From Octopus bimaculoides (taxonomy: Eukaryota): a DNA stretch of 42,935 bases. Below, piece by piece: positions 2,960-42,599 of this stretch (position 1 is the stretch's first letter; each line of letters begins with the position of its first letter). Made by a program: the position numbers and the translations under genes. Location of the stretch: positions 49,965,404 through 50,008,338 of the forward strand of contig NC_068986.1 of the NCBI RefSeq assembly GCF_001194135.2, read 5' to 3'. The notes beneath the pieces are model-generated. The model was not told where the DNA came from. It made no database searches and saw only the letters and a list, made by a program, of their open reading frames with translations.

Positions 2960-3325
2960 TTCTGTTCTTTCGTTATTTCTTTCTTTTTCTCTCACATTCA
3001 CTTAGCCTTTCTCCCTCTATGTATATCTATATTTCTCTCTCTCTTTCTTTTAGCCTTTCTCCCTATCTCACTCATTCATTCACACTTTCATTCTCTCTCC
3101 TCTCTTTCATTACTATGCTTTTTCTTTTTCTCCCTCCCATATTTCTAGCAATATCTTTCTTTCCTTCTCCCCTCTAATAATTTCTCCGAATCTCTTTTCG
3201 CCGTCTCATTCTTTTTAATCTATCTAAACTCCCCTTCACTTTGCTGTTTCTTTCACCACCTCTCTATATGTACTCTTAATCTTTTCTCCTCTCTCCGCTA
3301 CTCCTCTTTCTCTGTCTCCCTCTTT
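2960..3325 (+). repeat. CT-rich low-complexity tract immediately upstream of the CpG island
   Basis: Directly visible. It explains the L/S/F-rich spurious ORFs at 2903-3177. Confidence 0.85.
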
Positions 3326-3450
3326 GGCGCTCGCGCGCGAGTACGACCTGACCTAGGCGAAGCGTCTCCATGTACTTCCGGGTCGCCGGAGCGAAACGGG
3401 AAGGTCGGTCGCTCGCTTTTGGTCGGCGATTACGGTCAGTCGGCTGGTTG
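3325..3450 (+). promoter_or_regulatory. CpG-rich candidate core promoter of the + strand gene
   Basis: Abrupt CpG-dense island in AT-rich surroundings. Contains the palindrome CTCGCGCGCGAG (~3331-3342), an ETS-type ACTTCCGG (~3375-3382) and an arthropod-type initiator TCAGTC (3436-3441). It lies ~420 bp upstream of the ATG at 3858. The TSS position is an inference. Confidence 0.6.
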
Positions 3451-3857
3451 GTTGGTTTTGGTTTAGATTTCGTTCGGGTTTTTCTGTGGTTAGGTTAGGT
3501 TTGTTTGTTTGTGTGTGTGAGAGAGAGAGAGAGAGAGTGTCTTGGTTGTGTTGCGTTTTTTTATCCCCCCTCCTCTTTCTTCTCCTTCCTCTTCTTTTTT
3601 CTTCTCCGTTTCTGTGGGAGGAAGGAGGGAAGAAAGAAAGAAAGAGCGAGAGAGGGCCGAATGAAAGAAGGTGAGGGAATAGAGACGGCTTAATGGTTAA
3701 TGGTTAAACGTTAACAAAAAGGAAAAAAAAAAAAGAAAACAGAAAAGACAAAGTACGAAGCAGTAAGCCACATGCGGTTCATTTAAAATTATTATTACCC
3801 ATAGACCTCCTTCACATCGCTTTGGACGGTTGTTTCTTATACTTTTTTTGGTCGACA

Positions 3858-3897
3858 ATGCCTAGAAGAAAACAGAACTGCCCTAAACGTTTGAAAT
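3858..3897 (+). CDS. tsh: First coding exon of a probable teashirt/tiptop (TSHZ-like) zinc-finger repressor: MPRRKQNCPKRLK + 1 nt
   Basis: ATG CCT AGA AGA AAA CAG AAC TGC CCT AAA CGT TTG AAA T|GTAAGT: 40 coding nt followed by a consensus donor at 3898. The M-x-RRKQ-x-x-P motif is the FOG1/SALL/BCL11-type NuRD(RBBP4)-binding N-terminus. MPRRKQ specifically begins TSHZ1-3, which from recall also have a 40-nt first coding exon. ZNF827-like (MPRRKQEQPKRL) is the main alternative. No zinc fingers are visible in this window. Confidence 0.72.
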
Positions 3898-4751
3898 GTA
3901 AGTACGTTTACCATCTATATCATCATAATGTTCGTGTGTTCATTTTGCCCTTGTGGCTAATAAACGAAGAATTCTTTATATTATTAGAAAACATTAAAGA
4001 AAATATTAATATAAAGTAATAGTATGTGTTGTGGTTTTAATTTTTTTTTTTCTGTTACATATTCCCGTTTATATTTTTACTGTTTTCTTTTTTTTTCTCT
4101 TCGTTTCTTAATGCCATTTAGCGGTTGTTATTTAGTTGTTTGTCGTTAAATTGTTTTCACAATTGATTGTAGGAAAGGCATGAATGTCACACGAGCAAGT
4201 TGCCCCCTCATCCACGTAAATTCTGGCGGGTGACACATGCCGATGTAGAAAAAGAAAAGAAAAAAGCAAGCAAACAAATAAAACATTCATATTTTAGAAT
4301 ATTTTCATCTCCACCGTTTCTTGTTTGTGGGGTGGGTGGAGGTCTTTCCATCCTCATTTTATCGTTTTTTTATGCCTTTTTTTTTTCTCTTGTACACTCC
4401 GTTCCATTTCACATCATGNNNNNNNNNNNNNNNNNNNNNNNNNNNNNNNNNNNNNNNNNNNNNNNNNNNNNNNNNNNNNNNNNNNNNNNNNNNNNNNNNN
4501 NNNNNNNNNNNNNNNNNNNNNNNNNNNNNNNNNNNNNNNNNNNNNNNNNNNNNNNNNNNNNNNNNNNNNNNNNNNNNNNNNNNNNNNNNNNNNNNNNNNN
4601 NNNNNNNNNNNNNNNNNNNNNNNNNNNNNNNNNNNNNNNNNNNNNNNNNNNNNNNNNNNNNNNNNNNNNNNNNNNNNNNNNNNNNNNNNNNNNNNNNNNN
4701 NNNNNNNNNNNNNNNNNNNNNNNNNNNNNNNNNNNNNNNNNNNNNNNNNNN

Positions 4752-9666: not shown

Positions 9667-11199
9667 CATATATGTATATATGTGTTTGTATACAGGTACG
9701 TATAAAGACATAGAAGTGTGCATTTTACAAACGTTTACCCACCAAAGTACATGTGGGTACTTTTCTTTCGTTTGTTAGTCTATATTTGTAATAATTGGGT
9801 ACACATTTGTGTATGCAATTTCGCGAATAAGTAGTCAAAAGAGTATACAGCAGAGAAGAATTGGTATCTGATTTGAACTTATTACTCTATCTCCTCTATT
9901 GTTTATTTATTGCAACTGAGTTTCCTGTCCCCGAATCTCAGAGGAATACATACATAATATGCTAGCTTGGAAAACGGACGTTAACTGGGGATTGATGTGT
10001 GTGTGTGTGTGTGTGTGTGTGATGTACACGCACGTGTGTGTATATTATGTTTGTGTATGTTGTTATTTAATATACAATAAACAGATAAGTAACTATGCTC
10101 TTAATCAGAGGCGGCAGTTTCGCTGTTTTGTTGCCAGGTTTTGTCAGGAAAAAAAATGTGGTGTTGGGGTATTAGCATTTTGTATTAGAGTATCTCTAAT
10201 CTGTCAGTGAGTACGCCCGTCTCGTTTACCACATTTTGACTTACTCTTTCACACGCAGAGGCCACCACGAAATATGTTTGCTGCGTAAGATCTGTGAATT
10301 AACGTGTCCAAAGCATTATGTACCTCGTGTACACACATTATCACCAACCAACTCACGGCTGTTTCATAGTACATATTATTATTATTATCTTTACATCACC
10401 CCTTCCTGAATCTGCCATTGCCATGCTGACTGATGGGTGACTTCGCCATTCCGATGTTGATGGTATTAGTGAATATGCTGGTGGGGTACATTATTATTGT
10501 TATTGATGGTGGTGGCGGTATTTTTGTGGTGGTGCTGTTGATGTTCTTTAGCTCCGGTGCAAACGCTGATGGAGCAGGTAGGCCGCATGATCGAAAATAT
10601 TCCACCCACGACCAGCCCGCCTGTTTTAAATTCCAGATAGTATATCAAACGGTACGCTGATTATTCAATAAGGTCTTGATTTAAAATAAGAAAGGGAAAG
10701 AAAGTAAAGACTTTATAGAGTAAATTTAGGGGTAGATTTTGGCTTCGTGTTTCTTGTCAGTCGACCGGACACGTTGCTTTTCCTTCTTTGGTTCGGTATT
10801 GTCATTACGGTTGCTGAACAGACCTGAATCGTCAAAAGCGTTTCCTCAAAAACCATTTCGTCCTTTTTTATATATTTTTTATTGTTTCAGTCCAGGGTAA
10901 GTGTATCCCAGACTGCATTATCCAACGTAATCTTTTCTGAGACGGTAGTGACGTGGTTTGGGAGAGACCTGGCTACAGTTTCTAGCTGGTCTACCCTTCC
11001 ACTGTGTAGAGGTTCCTCTACTTGTTTGTTTGTGGTGGAGTATTGATGATAATGGTATCGTTGTTGTTCTAAATACATAAACTATACCCTTCTTCCTTCC
11101 TTTTTTTTCTCCCCCCCCTCTCACATTTTTTCTTTTTATTTCCCTCTCACTCACATACGCACACAGACATTCCTTCTCTCTCTCTCTTTCATTAAATTA

Positions 11200-27117: not shown

Positions 27118-27478
27118 TTGTTGGCACTCCGTCGCTTACGACGTCGAGGGTTCCAGTTGATCCGATCAACGGAACAGCCTGCTCGTGATATTAACGTGCA
27201 AGTGGCTGAGCACTCCACAGACACGTGTACCCTTAACGTAGTTCTCGGGGATATTCAGCGTGACAAGGCTGACCGTTTGAATTACAGGCACAGCAGAAAC
27301 AGGAAGAAAGTTGTGGTGAAAGAATACAGCAGGGTTCGCCACCATCCCCTGCCGGAGCCACGTGAAGCTTTAAGTGTTTTCGCTCAATAAACACTCACAA
27401 CGCCCGGTCTGGGAATCGAAACCGCGATCCTATGACTGCGAGTCCGCTGCCCTAACCACTGGGTCATTGCGCCTCCAC
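27118..27478 (-). mobile_element. tRNA-Arg-like SINE (OR1-like), near full length
   Basis: The reverse complement aligns end to end with the copy at 41319-41692. Imperfect 12-bp target-site duplication (CTGCTTTTTGTA / CTGCTTTGTGTG in element orientation). Confidence 0.92.
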
Positions 27479-33522: not shown

Positions 33523-33890
33523 CTTACTTGTTTCTGATACTGGACTGCAGCCATGCTGGAGCACCGCGTTGAAATGTTTAGTCCGCCCCAATACTTTTTT
33601 TTTTTTTCATTCTGCTACCTATTCTATTGATCTCTTGTGCCGAACCGCTAGGTGAGTTACGGAGGACGTAAATAAGCTAACACCGGTTGTCAAGTGATAG
33701 TAGAGGACAAACACGGACACACAATCACAGTTGTGTGTGTGTGTGTAGAACGAGCTTGCTCTCAGTTTCCGCCTACCAAATTCATTCAGAAAGCGTTGAT
33801 CGGCTCTAAGTCATAGTAGAAAATGCTTTGTAGTGAGACTGAACCCAAACCCTTGTGGCTGCAAAGCAAGTTTCTGAACAGTTATGCCAC
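33523..33890 (-). mobile_element. OR2-like SINE, diverged
   Basis: GACTGCAGCCATGCTGGAGCACCGC, GCCGAACCGCTA, CAGTTTCCGCCTACCAAATT and GAGACTGAACCC. Confidence 0.82.
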
Positions 33891-33994
33891 TCTCTATCTT
33901 TCTCCCATATATATATATGTATATGTGTGTACACACACACACCATGGCATACAAACTACAATGGTTACCATTATGTACATATTTCTGTGGATTC

Positions 33995-34643: not shown

Positions 34644-36043
34644 AAACAATGTACAAAGCTAAATCCAGATTCCACAATATGCGAACTTGGAAAAACTAGT
34701 AAAATAGGTTCAAAAGTTGCTCATGGTTTGAGGGTATTTTGATAGATTTTTTTCCTTTTGTTTTGAAAAAAATCTGAATCTTTTCGGTTGGAGCCAAATT
34801 GTTCGTTCATTTAAAATAACCTGTACGTTTTAAACGGGCTGTACGTGAACGAAACAGCACCAATGAACATCACACTTGATCAGACATTATAATAGCTGTG
34901 GGTAACAACACACACATACAGGTGTGAATATTGATATGAACATAGAGCTGTAGGGATAACAAAGCACACAAATATGAGTACACAGTTCAATCATATACAA
35001 AGGGAGGAGCAGTTAGCAGTGCACACACAGCAGTGGGTGTTAATACGCACAGAACTTTTTGTGCCAACTCAGATAAGCTGAAAAACACTCACGCACGCCC
35101 GCTCGTACATCGCTGGCGGATACCAAACACGCACGAGACACTGAGTAGAAATACAGATACAACTATAAACACCAATGATATTGCTTCTGTATGCTAGGAT
35201 GTGTTACTCATGTCTGAAGTGGTTTTTCCAACCACCTCTGTATGTTCTGCTTTATCTTTGCTTTCATTTTCCTTTTTGTTTTTTTGTTTTTTTTTTTCAC
35301 GAACGAACTTTGAAAAGTTTGTAATTATGATTACCAATCAGTTTTTGCCCTATAGGTTTTTGTTCTTTTTGTATTTTTAATTGTTTGTCCAGTTCTTAGT
35401 ACCATTTGGCTTTGACAATATCGTCTGCGATTTTCAGCATTTCTTTTCTAGTTTTTCTTTCTACTTTCCGACACTCACCCATTTTCTATTTTTATTCACT
35501 AACTGTTTCTATTTCTGTCGGTTAGTCCTGTAACTTCTTTTCGAGCTTTTAACCCGGCTGTTTCTTCTGGTATTTTGTTTGAAGTTTCTTTGAAATAGGC
35601 TTATATACTCTGTCTATGCCGGGACTTCTCAAAGTGATCTATATAGACCTTTAGCTTTTTCTCTTTGTGGGAATAAATAAAGTTCGAGGGTTCACAGGGA
35701 TTAGATTTACTAGCTTGCATTTAAAAATCCCTTTATAACAGAACAAAATTCACTGAGTAATATATAATAGTTACCAGATATTGTCACACCTTGGAGAATG
35801 TCTGATCAAGTGTGATGTCCATTGGTGCTGTTTCGTTCACGCACAGCCCGTTTAAAACGTACAGGTTATTTTAAATGAACGAACAATTTGGCTCCAACCG
35901 AAAAAAATCCAGATTTTTTTCAAAATAGAATGAAAAAAATCTATCAAAATACACTCAAACCTTGAGCAACTTTTGAACCTATTTTACTAGTTTTTTCCAA
36001 GTTCGCATAGTGTGGAATCTAAGTTTAGCTTCGTACATTATTT
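34644..36043. mobile_element. 1.4-kb non-autonomous DNA transposon / foldback-like element with ~245-bp inverted arms
   Basis: 34644-34888 is the reverse complement of 35797-36043, with about 17 differences counted by eye (~93% identity). The spacer 34889-35796 is 908 bp. Confidence 0.9.
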
Positions 36044-36771
36044 ACTAAGCTAACAGAGTAGCACTCCAAACGTAGAATGTGGTGATGTCCGACTCAAACT
36101 CACTAACCTGCAATTTAATCTTCATGATCTTTTCAATGTTTACCAAACCCATCTACCTTGTTCAAAACTAATTCAAGCATTAGAAAAGCGTTTGTATTTT
36201 GAGTTTACTGATCTTTTTTCTTGTTAATTAAGCACTAGTACATCTGTTATGTTTTCTCATTGAATATTCGATGATTTTTTTTTTTTTTTTTGTTTAAGGT
36301 GAATGGAAATTAAATTTTGTAACAAAACATTTGAGAAATACTGGTCTACGGCCAATCGTCTCAAACTAACACTAAGATGCGAAAGTGAGCCTTGTATGTA
36401 TTTCAAATTTTGAACTACGTTTTTATCTGCAACTTTGTTCACATTATATCGTTGTATGTATGTATTAGTACAGTTGGACAGTGACGGACTCCGCCGGGTT
36501 TTAAAAGGGCGCCCAAGGCATGTTGTATGCCACGACGGCGCGTTTGGTTCTCCATCAAGAGTTGAAAGACCCATAATTCATTATCGCCTTCTGCTGGACG
36601 ATCATAATACGCCCTGAAAATATCTAGGACACCTAAGAACATGAAACTTCCAGTCACGATGTATTATCATTACTAGGCTATATGTATTTCACTATTTCCC
36701 CTCTTATGTATGCATTGAATATTTCAATTTTGTTCGTGTAAACACCTATAATTCATTATACATACGCACAC

Positions 36772-36806
<35 letters not shown>

Positions 36807-36989
36807 TCCCTACATTTTACTGCTGGTGTCCGCCCACCTCCCGTGCAGGCTGTCAATCATCTGTCAAGCCCGACTTTATGGCGCCACTCCACCCTATCTA
36901 CGTCACCATCAATCACCGAACGCTTTTATAGCTAATGTATTTGTTCAACACTGCAAACAGTCAGTTGAAACTGGCTGCTCTGCAATCTC

Positions 36990-37755
36990 TCTCCCACTAT
37001 CTCTCTCTTTCTCATTCTCTCTGACTCTCTCTTTCTCTCTCGCTACTCTTTCTCACTTTTTCTCTTTCTCTACATCCTTTTGCCTTACGCACACACACAC
37101 ACACACACACACAAACACAAACACATACACACACACACTTTATGCCTCTCTCTATTCCAGTATTATTATCTTCCCTTTTTCTCCCTCCATCCCCCCTCTA
37201 TCTTTCTCTATTTTTCTCTTGCTCACATACTCTCACTTGCTCATGCTTCTCTCTTTCTACTCTCTCTCCTCTTTCTACTCTCTCTCTCTCTCCTCTGTCT
37301 ACTCTCTCTACCCCGTGGTTCTTCTCTTATTCTCTCTCTCTCTTTACCTCCCCTTTCTGTTTTATCCCCCACCTCCTTTGCTCTCTCATTCGCTCTTCTG
37401 TCTTCTCTTTTCGTTTACTCACCTTTTCTCTCTCTCTATCACTTTCAATTGTTTTTGTCTTTCTCTGTCTTTCTCTCTCCTAATTGTTCTTCCTTTCTCC
37501 ATGTCCCTCCCTCCTCTGCTTCATTATCACTCTCGCTGTCTTTCTTTAGCTCTTTCACCCTCATTTACTCTGCTCTGTCTTCTAATTCTCTCTCTCTCTC
37601 TCTCTCTCTCTTCATTTGTTTGTGCTTCTTTTCTTTCTCTAAATCTCCTTTGCTCCTCGACTTCTCTTCCATCTCTCTCTCTCTCTTTCTCTCTCTCCAT
37701 TTGCTTCTTTTCTTTCACTGAATCTTGTTTACTCCTTTACCTCTCTATCCTCTTC

Positions 37756-37795
<40 letters not shown>

Positions 37796-38321
37796 NNNNN
37801 NNNNNNNNNNNNNNNNNNNNNNNNNNNNNNNNNNNNNNNNNNNNNNNNNNNNNNNNNNNNNNNNNNNNNNNNNNNNNNNNNNNNNNNNNNNNNNNNNNNN
37901 NNNNNNNNNNNNNNNNNNNNNNNNNNNNNNNNNNNNNNNNNNNNNNNNNNNNNNNNNNNNNNNNNNNNNNNNNNNNNNNNNNNNNNNNNNNNNNNNNNNN
38001 NNNNNNNNNNNNNNNNNNNNNNNNNNNNNNNNNNNNNNNNNNNNNNNNNNNNNNNNNNNNNNNNNNNNNNNNNNNNNNNNNNNNNNNNNNNNNNNNNNNN
38101 NNNNNNNNNNNNNNNNNNNNNNNNNNNNNNNNNNNNNNNNNNNNNNNNNNNNNNNNNNNNNNNNNNNNNNNNNNNNNNNNNNNNNNNNNNNNNNNNNNNN
38201 NNNNNNNNNNNNNNNNNNNNNNNNNNNNNNNNNNNNNNNNNNNNNNNNNNNNNNNNNNNNNNNNNNNNNNNNNNNNNNNNNNNNNNNNNNNNNNNNNNNN
38301 NNNNNNNNNNNNNNNNNNNNN

Positions 38322-38358
<37 letters not shown>

Positions 38359-38570
38359 GCCCTTTCCCCATTTGTATGCGTTTCTCTTCTTTCTCCATAT
38401 TTCGTTTGCCCCTCTACCCTCTTCTATTTCTCTCTCTCTATCTATCTATCTATCTATCTCCCTCTCTCAATACTAACCTTTTTCTCTTCACCTTTTTTCC
38501 TTTCACTCACACCCGGCCTCTCTCTCCCACTTCTCATCGTACTTCTTTCTTTTTACATTCACCTACTTCT
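36990..38570 (+). repeat. (CT)n-rich polypyrimidine block including N-gap 37796-38321
   Basis: Directly visible. Source of the 585-aa pseudo-ORF 36826-38583. Confidence 0.92.
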
Positions 38571-38884
38571 GATGACAGCTTGAGGCTACTCTCTGTGTCA
38601 ACACTCAACGCGTTTTACGCTGTCCCTCTCGTTGCCTTGCATTTCTGAGTGTAACTCTCGTCAGCGATTATGACATCATTGCTTTTCAGTACTGATTAAG
38701 TAAGTACCTAAGACCACTGGATTTGCAAAGACAGAATAGAGAGTCAGACAAAATACTTGGCTAGCACGTACCTGCAAAGGTAACTTCGTGGACACTCGAC
38801 TTCCTAGAAGTAGTAATCTAATCTCACGTAAATCAACCTTAACCGATTTAGCAAAAGAAACAACGGTTCTGTTTCCACTATATC

Positions 38885-40495: not shown

Positions 40496-40564
40496 AGTTT
40501 ATCCGATATCGAAACTTTATTCGTCGCTATCCTTTCTAATGTTATTGATTGAGATTCCGTTATC

Positions 40565-40971
40565 AGACGCTGGAGTGGCTGTGTAGTGAGAAGTTTGCTT
40601 CCCAACCACATGGTCTCGGGTTCAATCTCACTGCGTGGTACCTTGGGCAAGAGTCTTCTACTATAGCCTCGAGCCGACTAAAGCCTTTTGAGTGGATTTG
40701 GTAGATGGAAACTGAAAGAAGCCCGTCGTATATATGTATGCGTGTGTGTGTGTGTGCGCGCATCTTTTTGTCTGTGTTTCTCACTTCACCACCGCTTGAC
40801 AACTGGTGTTGGTGTGTTTACGTCTCTGTAACTTAGCGGTTCGGCTAAAGAGTGATAGAATCAGTAGCAGGCTTTTAAAATGTAAGTACTGGGGGTCGAT
40901 TCGTTTGAGTAAAGTTCTTCAAGGTGATGCTCCAGCATGGTCGCAGTCTAATGACTGAAACAAGTAAAAGA
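40565..40971 (+). mobile_element. OR2-like SINE, best-preserved copy in the window
   Basis: All family blocks are present in order: tRNA-like head, CCTTGGGCAAGAGTCTTCTACTATAGCCTCG (CORE-like), central TA/TG tract, and the tail ending AATGACTGAAACAAGTAAAAG. Confidence 0.92.
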
Positions 40972-41318: not shown

Positions 41319-41692
41319 GTGGAGGCGCAATGCCCCGTGGTTAGGGCAGCGAACTCGCGGTCATAGGATCGCGGTTTCGATTCCCAGACCGGGCGTTGTG
41401 AGTGTTTATTGAGCGAAAAACACCTAAAGCTCCACGAGGCTCCGGCAGGGGATGGTGGCGAACCCTGCTATATTCTTTCACTACTCTTTCTTCCTGTTTC
41501 TGTTGTGCCTGTATTTCAAAGGGCCAGCCTTGTCACACTGTGCCACGCTGAATATCCCCCGAGAACTACGTTAAGGGTACACGTGTCTGTGGAGTGCTCA
41601 GCCACTTGCACGTTAATATCACGAGCAGGCTGTTCCGTTGACCGGATCAACTGGAACCCTCGACGTCGTAAGCGACGGAGTGCCAACAACAA
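41319..41692 (+). mobile_element. tRNA-Arg-like SINE (OR1-like), full length, with a perfect 11-bp TSD
   Basis: A-box-like TGGTTAGGGC and B-box-like GGTTTCGATTCC; ends GTGCCAACAACAA. TSD AAAGAAGCAGT at 41308-41318 and 41693-41703. Confidence 0.95.
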
Positions 41693-42599
41693 AAAGAAGC
41701 AGTATTAGAGTATTGGATACATGTCCTGTGAAGCAAGCAGCAGTGCCTTATATTCTGCCATGCAAAACGTTGTAGCATATATACTATAAACATGTAGAGT
41801 AAACATTCAAACCTTTCCAAATCCTGCTGCTTTTCACATGGAATTTTTGCTTCTTATAAATCGTTTTGAGGTATCAGTCAACCTACTTTTTTTTTTTTTA
41901 AACTTTATATTTTGGCATGAAAAATTCGAATTGTATCCCGGAAAATACGGTATTATAGTAGTGACATGTCTTGTGAAGCTAGAGCCAGTGGTCTTTGTGA
42001 AGTAAGGAAGCAAATCTCCCTGTGAGCAGAGATCATTCAGCTGTTTCAATTCGGAAACGTTGAACACATTTTACTTCTTTCACATAATCTACCTCCGGCG
42101 GTCAACTATCATAGGGAAGACAACTCCTTCTAGATTAAGTTAAGTTGAGACAGGTTTGAAATTTAAATCAAAAAGCGAAGAACGGCGTACAAAGTACACA
42201 CAATTTAATATTTCATTTTTCAGCACATTATAAAGATCTTAAAATTTCTGTTATTCTGCTAATGTCATTTGGTACGTAAACAATGTATTCACACCTTCCA
42301 TTCATTTCTTCCTTCTTTTAAAACATGGGTTTGATGGACCAAATCAAAAGAGAAACCATTATTTTTGCGTTAAATATGCTGTCCCGTTTCGATTCCCAGT
42401 TGAATTTTCATTGAATTGTCTCCTTTAATTCTCTTAATATGTCTTAAGAAAAACATGAATATCACAACTTCCCCATCCAATTTTTCTCATCCAGAAATCT
42501 AAAGCTTCGTTGTTGTCTCCTATATTTAAGTTTGTTTTTCAGTACAGTCTGTATTCAGTCCCCTATGAATAAGAATCTCCCACACACAAGCATACGCAC

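What the first reader, a model, noticed from the sequence alone, without database searches (positions are those of the whole stretch)
36845..36930. Compact PBX-MEIS + MEIS + HOX + PBX-HOX site cluster: candidate Hox-response enhancer
Seen within 66 bp of a GC-richer unique island between microsatellites: CTGTCAATCA (36850-36859, = TGATTGACAG), CTGTCA (36861-36866, = TGACAG), TTTATGG (36875-36881) and CCATCAATCA (36906-36915, = TGATTGATGG), plus TTTTATAG (~36924). Established: TGATTGACAG is the canonical PBX-PREP/MEIS decamer, TGATTGATGG the canonical PBX-HOX1/labial site, and TTTATGG a posterior-Hox/Cdx-type core. Paired PBX-HOX and MEIS sites define trimeric Hox enhancers such as Hoxb1 ARE, Hoxb2 r4 and lab550, and Drosophila tsh is Hox-regulated. 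Inference: a TALE-Hox enhancer of cephalopod tsh. Two exact 10-mers on the same strand 56 bp apart are unlikely by chance.
Basis: partly seen in the sequence, partly recalled or inferred. Interest (0 to 1): 0.72.

Follow-up and report, generated by a model that had tools for sequence, protein, structure and literature searches.

The report
Candidate Pbx/Meis/Hox site cluster, octopus tsh
A 66-bp stretch about 33 kb downstream of the first exon of an octopus teashirt-like gene holds textbook binding sites for the Hox cofactors Pbx and Meis and for a Pbx-Hox pair; this is rarer than chance predicts for one window, but it is only a plausible, untested enhancer candidate of a well-known kind.

Summary
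The 183-bp segment between microsatellites has no second copy in the window.

A tsh/TSHZ-type first exon (MPRRKQNCPKRLK plus a GTAAGT donor) lies 33 kb upstream on the + strand. A repeat in the window matches Octopus bimaculoides proteins.

The simple Pbx-Hox + Meis syntax is not surprising: it occurs in about 25% of simulated windows. The exact Pbx-Meis/Prep decamer with a Pbx-Hox site within 100 bp occurs in about 0.1% of them. That still implies on the order of 10^2 chance cases in a genome of about 2.7 Gb, and the motif choice was post hoc.

A decayed-minisatellite origin, an RNA gene and a coding exon were tested and not supported.

The decisive tests, conservation in other cephalopods and genome copy number, could not be run. 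No cephalopod genome was reachable.

Verdict: a credible but unproven TALE/Hox cis-regulatory candidate (about 40%), nearly matched by neutral chance (about 38%). It would be a new member of a known kind. Interest is modest.

The parts
36850..36859 (-). TGATTGACAG: exact Pbx:Prep/Meis 'DECA' heterodimer site
   Evidence: the only copy in the window. Motif identity from PMC6023610 and PMC3261376.
36861..36866 (-). TGACAG: Meis/Prep monomer 'HEXA' site, part of an 11-bp local duplication of the decamer's 3' half
   Evidence: It lies 39 bp from the Pbx-Hox site. There are 33 TGACAG in the window.
36875..36881 (+). TTTATGG: posterior-Hox/Cdx-like monomer core (weak evidence)
   Evidence: 3 copies in the window. 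The factor assignment rests on general knowledge and was not tested.
36906..36915 (-). TGATTGATGG: Pbx-Hox bipartite site that fits TGATNNATKR, with the class-1 (Lab/Pb-type) core TGATTGAT
   Evidence: one of 4 KR motifs in the window. Class assignment from PMC6689074.
36924..36931 (+). TTTTATAG: weak AT-rich Hox-like core
   Evidence: 2 copies in the window. It carries little weight.
36803..36985 (.). 183-bp non-repetitive segment between (TA)n and TC/CA microsatellites that carries the cluster
   Evidence: GC 0.49 and no second copy in the window. No RNA structure signal.
3858..3897 (+). Context: tsh/TSHZ-type coding exon 1 (MPRRKQNCPKRLK, phase 1), followed by a GTAAGT donor at 3898-3903
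   Evidence: N-terminus compared with the vertebrate TSHZ fragment P0020, MPRRKQQAPKR.
3301..3500 (.). Context: CpG island upstream of exon 1, the likely tsh promoter
   Evidence: 22 CpG in 200 bp, GC 0.56, o/e 1.40.

Best explanation
The cluster is a small intronic (or downstream) cis-regulatory module of the octopus teashirt-like gene that acts as a docking platform for TALE homeodomain proteins.

Proposed mechanism (inferred, not shown):
- A Pbx(Exd)-Meis/Prep(Hth) heterodimer binds the exact decamer TGATTGACAG.
- A second Pbx pairs with a Hox protein on TGATTGATGG, 56 bp away. The TGATTGAT core favours anterior, Hox1/Hox2-type proteins.
- The intervening TGACAG, and the TTTATGG / TTTTATAG cores, could add Meis and Hox-monomer or Cdx contacts.
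- Occupancy would open chromatin and give tsh transcription positional (Hox) input.

Shown: the sites, their spacing, the tsh context and their rarity under a sequence null.

Inferred: binding, enhancer activity, the Hox paralogue involved and the target gene.
For: - The motifs are exact at the stated positions.
- This is the only TGATNNATKR + CTGTCA pair in the 39.5 kb of non-N sequence, with gaps of 39 and 50 bp. That satisfies the experimentally derived enhancer syntax (PMC4489388).
- The decamer plus a Pbx-Hox site occurs in 0.12% of Markov-simulated windows, and in 0.01% when an extra hexamer is required (analytic range).
- The motif meanings rest on ChIP-seq, SELEX and reporter work.
- Prep1 binds about 3,300 sites at this 'highly specific decameric consensus' in the mouse embryo trunk (PMC4395233 abstract).
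- The tsh exon lies 33 kb upstream on the same scaffold.
- TSHZ3 and TSHZ1 loci rank near the top for conserved Pbx-Hox motifs in vertebrates. A fly tsh enhancer has homeotic response elements (title cited).
- The segment is not repeated in the window, not minisatellite-like, not RNA-like and has no real protein homologue.
Against: - There is no conservation, chromatin, binding or expression evidence of any kind.
- The motif definition was post hoc. About 0.1% per window still means roughly 80 chance decamer + Pbx-Hox pairs in a genome of about 2.7 Gb (genome size from my own knowledge). Real genomes are less random than a Markov chain.
- The window shows no general excess of Pbx-Hox motifs: 4 KR motifs against 5.8-12.5 expected.
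- The hexamer-to-Pbx-Hox gap of 39 bp sits at the edge of the validated range. It is wider than the roughly 10-20 bp of classic trimeric elements.
- There is no CCAAT box within 450 bp, whereas a subset of occupied decamers has one nearby.
- The extra hexamer comes from a local duplication.
- The surrounding intron is dominated by microsatellites and transposon copies.
- In the human genome most instances of the simple syntax lie in non-conserved DNA, with only 1.5-fold enrichment in conserved sequence.
Confidence: 0.4

Rival explanations
1. Neutral chance cluster. The sites arose by drift in non-functional intronic DNA and were picked out because they match famous motifs. They are not occupied, or occupancy has no regulatory consequence.
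For: - The simple syntax is expected in about 25% of such windows.
- About 10^2 decamer + Pbx-Hox pairs are expected genome-wide by chance (scaled to genome size).
- The motif set was defined after looking.
- The two 10-mers share 8 of 10 bases, and the extra hexamer is a local duplication.
- There is no enrichment of Pbx-Hox motifs elsewhere in the window.
- The surroundings are repeat-dominated.
- Most syntax instances in the human genome are unconserved.
Against: - The per-window probability of the decamer + Pbx-Hox pair is about 10^-3, and about 10^-4 with the hexamer.
- The location is in a gene whose fly and vertebrate homologues are documented Hox/TALE targets.
- The exact decamer is a high-specificity site in vivo in vertebrates.
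Confidence: 0.38
2. The segment is a fragment of an interspersed repeat (transposon or SINE relic). The motifs would then be copied many times in the genome rather than being a locus-specific element.
For: - The window is rich in repeat families. One also occurs inside seven O. bimaculoides gene models at 80-96% identity.
- A 1.4-kb long-inverted-repeat element ends 800 bp upstream.
- A possible 10-bp target-site duplication (CACATTATAT at 36440 and 36769) flanks the adjacent 329-bp segment.
- The metagenome contig L003 shows the same motifs in what looks like a repeat-bearing region of another eukaryote.
Against: - There is no second copy in the window.
- None of the six reading frames of the segment or its flank hit anything real in two protein libraries, while the known repeat did. 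This is weak, because cephalopod non-coding DNA is evidently not in those libraries.
- There is no tRNA-like or Rfam signal.
Confidence: 0.12
3. Relic of a (CTGTCAATCAY)n minisatellite. The two 10-mers would be diverged units of one former tandem array, as seen in other eukaryotes.
For: - A collection scan for the arrangement found three contigs (L001-L003). In L001 and L002 it is produced by tandem arrays of CTGTCAATCA-type units with a roughly 10-11-bp period, in which CCATCAATCA occurs as a variant unit; L003 is a looser repeat-bearing region.
- In the window, CTGTCAAtcat / CTGTCAAgcc is a 1.6-unit tandem duplication.
Against: - The 39-bp spacer shows no similarity to the unit (P = 0.56-0.96).
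- There is no period-11 signal (P = 0.11).
- Local alignment of the two halves finds only the shared TCAATCA (P = 0.21).
Confidence: 0.04
4. The segment is a transcribed functional element of another sort: a small RNA gene, or an alternative coding exon of tsh. A pyrimidine tract followed by CAG|G at 36830-36850 resembles a splice acceptor.
For: There is an acceptor-like sequence just before the decamer. Open frames cross the segment.
Against: - Spliced in phase to exon 1, the frame stops after about 27 codons, at 36929-36931.
- There is no credible donor.
- Folding is no better than shuffles (z = 0.02 and 0.58).
- There is no Rfam or tRNA match.
- The protein-library hits are repeat artefacts.
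Confidence: 0.02

Closest known systems
Vertebrate PBX-HOX + MEIS/PREP enhancers in conserved non-coding elements, including those at TSHZ3 and TSHZ1 (Parker et al. 2011, PMC3261376; Grice et al. 2015, PMC4489388)
   Same: It has TGATNNATKR plus CTGTCA within 40-100 bp. It sits in the non-coding landscape of a teashirt-family gene. One published meis2 element also carries a TGATTGACAG decamer beside the pair.
   Different: Those elements were defined by deep sequence conservation and validated in zebrafish reporters. Here conservation is unknown, the host is a mollusc and nothing has been assayed.
Trimeric Hox-Pbx-Meis response elements (Hoxb1 ARE, Hoxb2 r4 enhancer, Drosophila lab550)
   Same: It has a bipartite Pbx-Hox site of anterior-Hox type and a separate Meis/Prep hexamer on the same short fragment.
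   Different: - In the classic elements the hexamer lies about 10-20 bp from the Pbx-Hox site (one search reports an offset of about 10 bp). Here the gap is 39 bp.
- The core is TGATTGAT rather than the TGATGGAT of the Hoxb1/lab elements (my own knowledge).
- This element is not at a Hox gene.
- It also carries a full Pbx:Meis decamer.
DECA (TGATTGACAG) elements bound by Pbx:Prep dimers, with or without an adjacent NF-Y CCAAT box (Ladam et al. 2018, PMC6023610; bioRxiv 10.1101/720102)
   Same: The decamer is exact and lies near a developmental transcription-factor gene, about 33 kb from its promoter.
   Different: There is no CCAAT or ATTGG within 450 bp. About 17% of TALE-bound sites are of the composite type, so this does not exclude the TALE-only type. 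Occupancy is unknown.
Drosophila teashirt enhancer with homeotic response elements (McCormick et al. 1995, Development 121:2799)
   Same: It would represent Hox input into a tsh gene through a non-coding element (title confirmed; the content is from my own knowledge).
   Different: The fly element responds to trunk Hox proteins (Antp, Ubx). The site type here is anterior class 1. There is no sequence relationship and none is expected.

Membership tests
PBX-HOX + MEIS/PREP enhancer syntax (Grice 2015, hb_40 / hb_100) | Canonical Pbx-Hox motif TGATNNATKR | tested here: met
   TGATTGATGG at 36906-36915 on the minus strand, one of 4 such motifs in the window.
PBX-HOX + MEIS/PREP enhancer syntax (Grice 2015, hb_40 / hb_100) | CTGTCA within 100 bp of the Pbx-Hox motif (within 40 bp for the stringent class) | tested here: met
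   The gaps are 39 bp (36861-36866) and 50 bp (36850-36855). This is the only such pair in the window. By chance it occurs in about 25% of windows.
PBX-HOX + MEIS/PREP enhancer syntax (Grice 2015, hb_40 / hb_100) | Both motifs evolutionarily conserved (the predictive power came from conserved co-occurrences) | not testable with these tools
   No cephalopod genome or orthologous intron was reachable.
PBX-HOX + MEIS/PREP enhancer syntax (Grice 2015, hb_40 / hb_100) | Reporter activity that depends on the two motifs | not testable with these tools
   This is an experiment.
DECA / TALE-dimer element | Exact or near-exact TGATTGACAG | tested here: met
   36850-36859 on the minus strand, unique in the window. 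A decamer is expected in 6% of windows.
DECA / TALE-dimer element | Adjacent NF-Y CCAAT box (composite DECA-CCAAT subtype only) | tested here: not met
   There is no CCAAT or ATTGG between 36400 and 37400. It is therefore not the composite subtype; the TALE-only subtype remains possible.
DECA / TALE-dimer element | In vivo co-occupancy by Pbx and Prep/Meis | not testable with these tools
   This needs ChIP or CUT&RUN in cephalopod embryos.
Trimeric Hox-Pbx-Meis response element (Hoxb1 ARE / Hoxb2 r4 / lab550 type) | Bipartite Pbx-Hox site with an anterior-Hox core | tested here: met
   TGATTGAT is the class-1 (Lab/Pb) core.
Trimeric Hox-Pbx-Meis response element (Hoxb1 ARE / Hoxb2 r4 / lab550 type) | Meis/Prep hexamer closely juxtaposed to the Pbx-Hox site (about 10-20 bp) | tested here: not met
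   The nearest hexamer is 39 bp away. The typical offset is about 10 bp.
Trimeric Hox-Pbx-Meis response element (Hoxb1 ARE / Hoxb2 r4 / lab550 type) | Hox- and TALE-dependent expression | not testable with these tools
   This is an experiment.
Interspersed repeat / transposon fragment | Multiple dispersed copies | tested here: inconclusive
   There is no second copy in the 42.9-kb window and no hit in the protein libraries, while a known repeat did hit. Genome-wide copy number could not be measured.
Minisatellite (CTGTCAATCAY)n | Head-to-tail units, or a recognisable decayed array, across the cluster | tested here: not met
   Only 1.6 units are present. The spacer is unlike the unit (P > 0.5) and there is no period-11 signal.
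tsh/TSHZ gene (context of the finding) | Short first coding exon encoding MPRRKQ..PKR, followed by a splice donor and a long intron | tested here: met
   ATG at 3858, MPRRKQNCPKRLK, GTAAGT at 3898, and a CpG island upstream. Compare the vertebrate MPRRKQQAPKR.
tsh/TSHZ gene (context of the finding) | Teashirt-type zinc-finger exon downstream | tested here: inconclusive
   No such exon lies within the window. It would lie beyond 42935, so placing the cluster inside 'intron 1' is an inference.

The most novel reading that the evidence does not exclude
The cluster is a conserved, functional enhancer through which an anterior (Hox1/Hox2-type) Hox protein with Pbx and Meis controls teashirt in cephalopods. 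The Hox/TALE-to-tsh link, known from flies and suggested for vertebrates, would then be an ancestral bilaterian wiring. It would have been retained in a lineage whose Hox genes are dispersed (the dispersal is from my own knowledge).
Probability: 0.12. Interest if true: 0.55.

Novelty: new member of a known kind. Interest (0 to 1): 0.3.

Why it matters
Almost nothing is known about individual enhancers in cephalopods. A validated TALE/Hox module at tsh would give a concrete, mutable element for asking how Hox input is read in a mollusc. It would also show whether the Hox-to-teashirt connection seen in flies, and implied by motif-rich vertebrate TSHZ conserved elements, is ancient.

The test is now practical. 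Cephalopod ATAC-seq, conserved-element sets and transgenesis are reported (PMC9023564 and PMC13652810; a bioRxiv preprint on a transgenic cephalopod is listed).

If the cluster is only a chance match, it is a useful reminder that exact textbook motifs occur about 10^2 times in a multi-gigabase genome.

Tried and rejected
1. Searching for related called ORFs across the segment. Six-frame pieces of 36805-37050 gave no hit against 5.8 billion proteins. Flank ORFs from 36260-36663 gave no hit, while a control repeat hit seven O. bimaculoides proteins. These nulls say little. Exact look-ups of three window ORFs and of one Octopus protein found nothing on record, so cephalopod non-coding DNA is not in the collections.

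2. Reaching the orthologous tsh intron through the protein. A TSHZ zinc-finger query written from memory returned only chordate fragments.

3. HMMER search of the longest frame against 1.84 billion representatives. The four hits are artefacts: weak matches summed over tandem repeats in repeat proteins.

4. Metagenome scan for the motif arrangement. It found three contigs: minisatellites in L001 and L002, and a looser repeat-bearing region in L003. They are not homologues. This suggested the minisatellite-relic idea, which was then rejected by alignment, periodicity and spacer tests.

5. RNA gene: no Rfam family at the gathering threshold. Only (TA)n-driven microRNA matches appeared, far below threshold. 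There was no tRNA and no folding signal.

6. Segmental duplication of a decamer + TTTAT module: not significant.

7. CpG-island character of the segment: none.

8. DECA-CCAAT composite: absent.

Full report
**Observation.**
- CTGTCAATCA at 36850-36859
- CTGTCA at 36861-36866
- TTTATGG at 36875-36881
- CCATCAATCA at 36906-36915
- TTTTATAG at 36924-36931

Read on the minus strand, the order is TGATTGATGG, then CCATAAA, then TGACAG, then TGATTGACAG. Each 10-mer occurs once in the window. The motifs lie in a 183-bp segment, 36803-36985. It is bounded by (TA)14.5 upstream and by TC-rich and (CA)n arrays downstream. Its GC is 0.49 against 0.38 window-wide, and its CpG o/e of 0.69 is unremarkable. 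It has no second copy in the window.

**What the window is.** It is eukaryotic DNA full of microsatellites, assembly gaps and interspersed repeats, with no long coding exon. One repeat family (27118-27390, with a second copy at 41344-41704) matches segments of seven Octopus bimaculoides UniRef proteins at 80-96% identity. The source is therefore Octopus, most likely O. bimaculoides.

At 3858-3897 an ATG opens MPRRKQNCPKRLK and runs into a consensus donor, GTAAGT. A strong CpG island lies just upstream, at 3301-3500. Vertebrate TSHZ proteins begin MPRRKQQAPKR (P0020), so this is a teashirt-type first exon. The cluster lies 32.95 kb downstream on the same strand. No zinc-finger exon is in the window, so 'inside intron 1' is an inference.

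**Is it more than chance?** I trained Markov models on the window.
- The published simple syntax (TGATNNATKR plus CTGTCA within 40 bp) has an analytic expectation of 0.23-0.66 instances per window. It occurs in 24.6% of order-3 simulations. On its own it means nothing.
- The exact decamer appears in 6.2% of simulated windows.
- The decamer plus any TGATNNATKR within 100 bp appears in 0.12%.
- Adding an extra hexamer gives 0.01%.
- The decamer plus the exact TGATTGATGG appears in 0 of 10,000 simulations. The analytic range is 0.7-12 x 10^-5.

Four things temper it:
- The motifs were chosen after looking.
- The two 10-mers share 8 of 10 bases.
- The extra hexamer belongs to an 11-bp local duplication (CTGTCAAtcat / CTGTCAAgcc).
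- A rate of 0.12% per 39.5 kb still predicts roughly 80 such pairs in a genome of about 2.7 Gb (genome size from my own knowledge). Real genomes are lumpier than a Markov chain.

The window as a whole shows no excess of Pbx-Hox motifs: 4 against 5.8-12.5 expected.

**Alternative origins tested.**
- *Minisatellite relic.* A scan of metagenome contigs for the arrangement returned three eukaryote-like contigs. In L001 and L002 it is generated by minisatellites of CTGTCAATCA-type units, with CCATCAATCA as a variant unit; L003 carries the motifs in a looser repeat-bearing region. That raised the possibility of a decayed array here. It does not hold up. The 39-bp spacer is unlike the unit (P = 0.56-0.96). 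There is no period-11 signal (P = 0.11). The two halves share only TCAATCA (P = 0.21).
- *RNA gene.* This is not supported. There is no Rfam family, no tRNA, and folding is no better than shuffles.
- *Exon.* A reading spliced in phase to exon 1 stops after about 27 codons.
- *Protein homology.* The protein-library hits to the translated segment are repeat artefacts.
- *Transposon fragment.* This reading cannot be excluded, because copy number in the genome could not be measured. Transposon-like features lie nearby: a 1.4-kb long-inverted-repeat element at 34644-36043, and a possible target-site duplication around 36440-36769.

**What the motifs mean, from the literature.**
- TGATTGACAG is the DECA site, bound by Pbx:Prep/Meis dimers. 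It is the predominant motif at Prep and Pbx peaks in early zebrafish embryos, and in mouse the sites bound by Prep1 share a highly specific decameric consensus.
- TGACAG near a Pbx:Hox site marks Hox-cofactor enhancers.
- TGATNNATKR is the stringent Pbx-Hox consensus.
- TGATTGAT is the core preferred by class-1 Hox proteins, Lab and Pb. Converting a site to it conferred lab-dependent expression in vivo.
- Vertebrate TSHZ3 and TSHZ1 loci rank near the top for conserved Pbx-Hox motifs, and several TSHZ3 elements drive hindbrain expression.
- A fly tsh enhancer with homeotic response elements is on record by title.

- The classic Hoxb1/lab sites use TGATGGAT, not TGATTGAT (my own knowledge).
- The architecture is not that of the tight trimeric elements. 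The hexamer is 39 bp from the Pbx-Hox site, against an offset of about 10 bp reported.

No CCAAT box accompanies the decamer. That excludes only the DECA-CCAAT composite subtype, which accounts for about 17% of TALE-bound sites.

**Most likely mechanism.** I favour, at about 40%, a small TALE-factor docking module.
- Pbx-Meis/Prep sits on the decamer.
- Pbx with an anterior-type Hox sits on TGATTGATGG, 56 bp away.
- The hexamer and the TTTAT cores may add Meis and Hox-monomer or Cdx contacts.
- Together they would give positional input to tsh.

Only the sites, their spacing, the gene context and their rarity are shown. Binding, activity, the Hox paralogue and the target gene are inferred.

A neutral chance cluster is almost as likely (about 38%). 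A repeat-derived origin takes about 12%, and the remaining readings a few per cent. I put it at roughly 20%.

**What could not be done.**
- Conservation and copy number: no cephalopod genome is reachable with the tools.
- Chromatin state: published cephalopod conserved-element and ATAC-seq resources exist but cannot be queried by position from here.

**Verdict.**
- Function is unproven.
- If real, the cluster is a new member of a well-known class rather than a new kind of element.
- Interest is modest.

Noticed in passing
window 3301-3903: A tsh/TSHZ-type first coding exon (ATG at 3858, MPRRKQNCPKRLK, GTAAGT donor at 3898), preceded by the strongest CpG island in the window (3301-3500; 22 CpG per 200 bp). 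This is probably the tsh promoter and 5' end.
   Followed up: partly
window 17001-17300: A second strong CpG island (20 CpG per 200 bp, o/e 1.4-1.7, GC about 0.5) inside the presumed intron. Its nature is unknown; an alternative promoter, another gene's 5' end or a young repeat are all possible.
   Followed up: no
window 34644-36043: A 1.4-kb element with long inverted terminal arms (34644-34900 and 35785-36043, 86-93% complementary). It looks like a foldback or long-TIR DNA transposon and ends about 800 bp upstream of the cluster.
   Followed up: no
window 27118-27390 (+) and 41344-41704 (-): Two copies of an interspersed repeat. Its translation also occurs inside seven annotated O. bimaculoides proteins at 80-96% identity, including models named for FMRFamide, an RGM domain and an MFS transporter. 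This suggests repeat exonisation or mis-annotation in those gene models.
   Followed up: partly
window ~156-359, ~21650-21780, ~33820-33900, ~40560-40680: A SINE-like family, recognisable from translations such as EPETMWLGSKLL and EPETTWLQNELL. ARAGORN finds no tRNA-like part.
   Followed up: no
window 36440-36794: CACATTATAT occurs at 36440 and again at 36769, flanking a 329-bp segment that is richer in GC and CpG and lies just upstream of the (TA)n array. This may be the target-site duplication of an insertion next to the cluster.
   Followed up: no
window 36894-36905: Two short motifs lie between the TALE sites: CTATCT (reverse complement AGATAG, a GATA-type core) and ACGTCA (reverse complement TGACGT, a CRE half-site). 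Both are short enough to be chance.
   Followed up: no
L001 587-1000, L002 1423-1603, L003 2330-2500: Metagenome contigs Ga0209781_1063137 and Ga0209458_1063236 (L001, L002), from unidentified eukaryotes, carry minisatellites of CTGTCAATCA-type units with CCATCAATCA variants, that is, tandem arrays of perfect Pbx-Meis decamers. Ga0209365_1026323 (L003) carries the same motifs in a looser repeat-bearing region.
   Followed up: partly
window 11000-15500 and 36986-38600: Long, strongly strand-asymmetric CT-rich low-complexity tracts (GC skew down to -0.78). They contain many of the window's CTGTCA hexamers, which inflates the hexamer count (33 observed against 16-25 expected).
   Followed up: no
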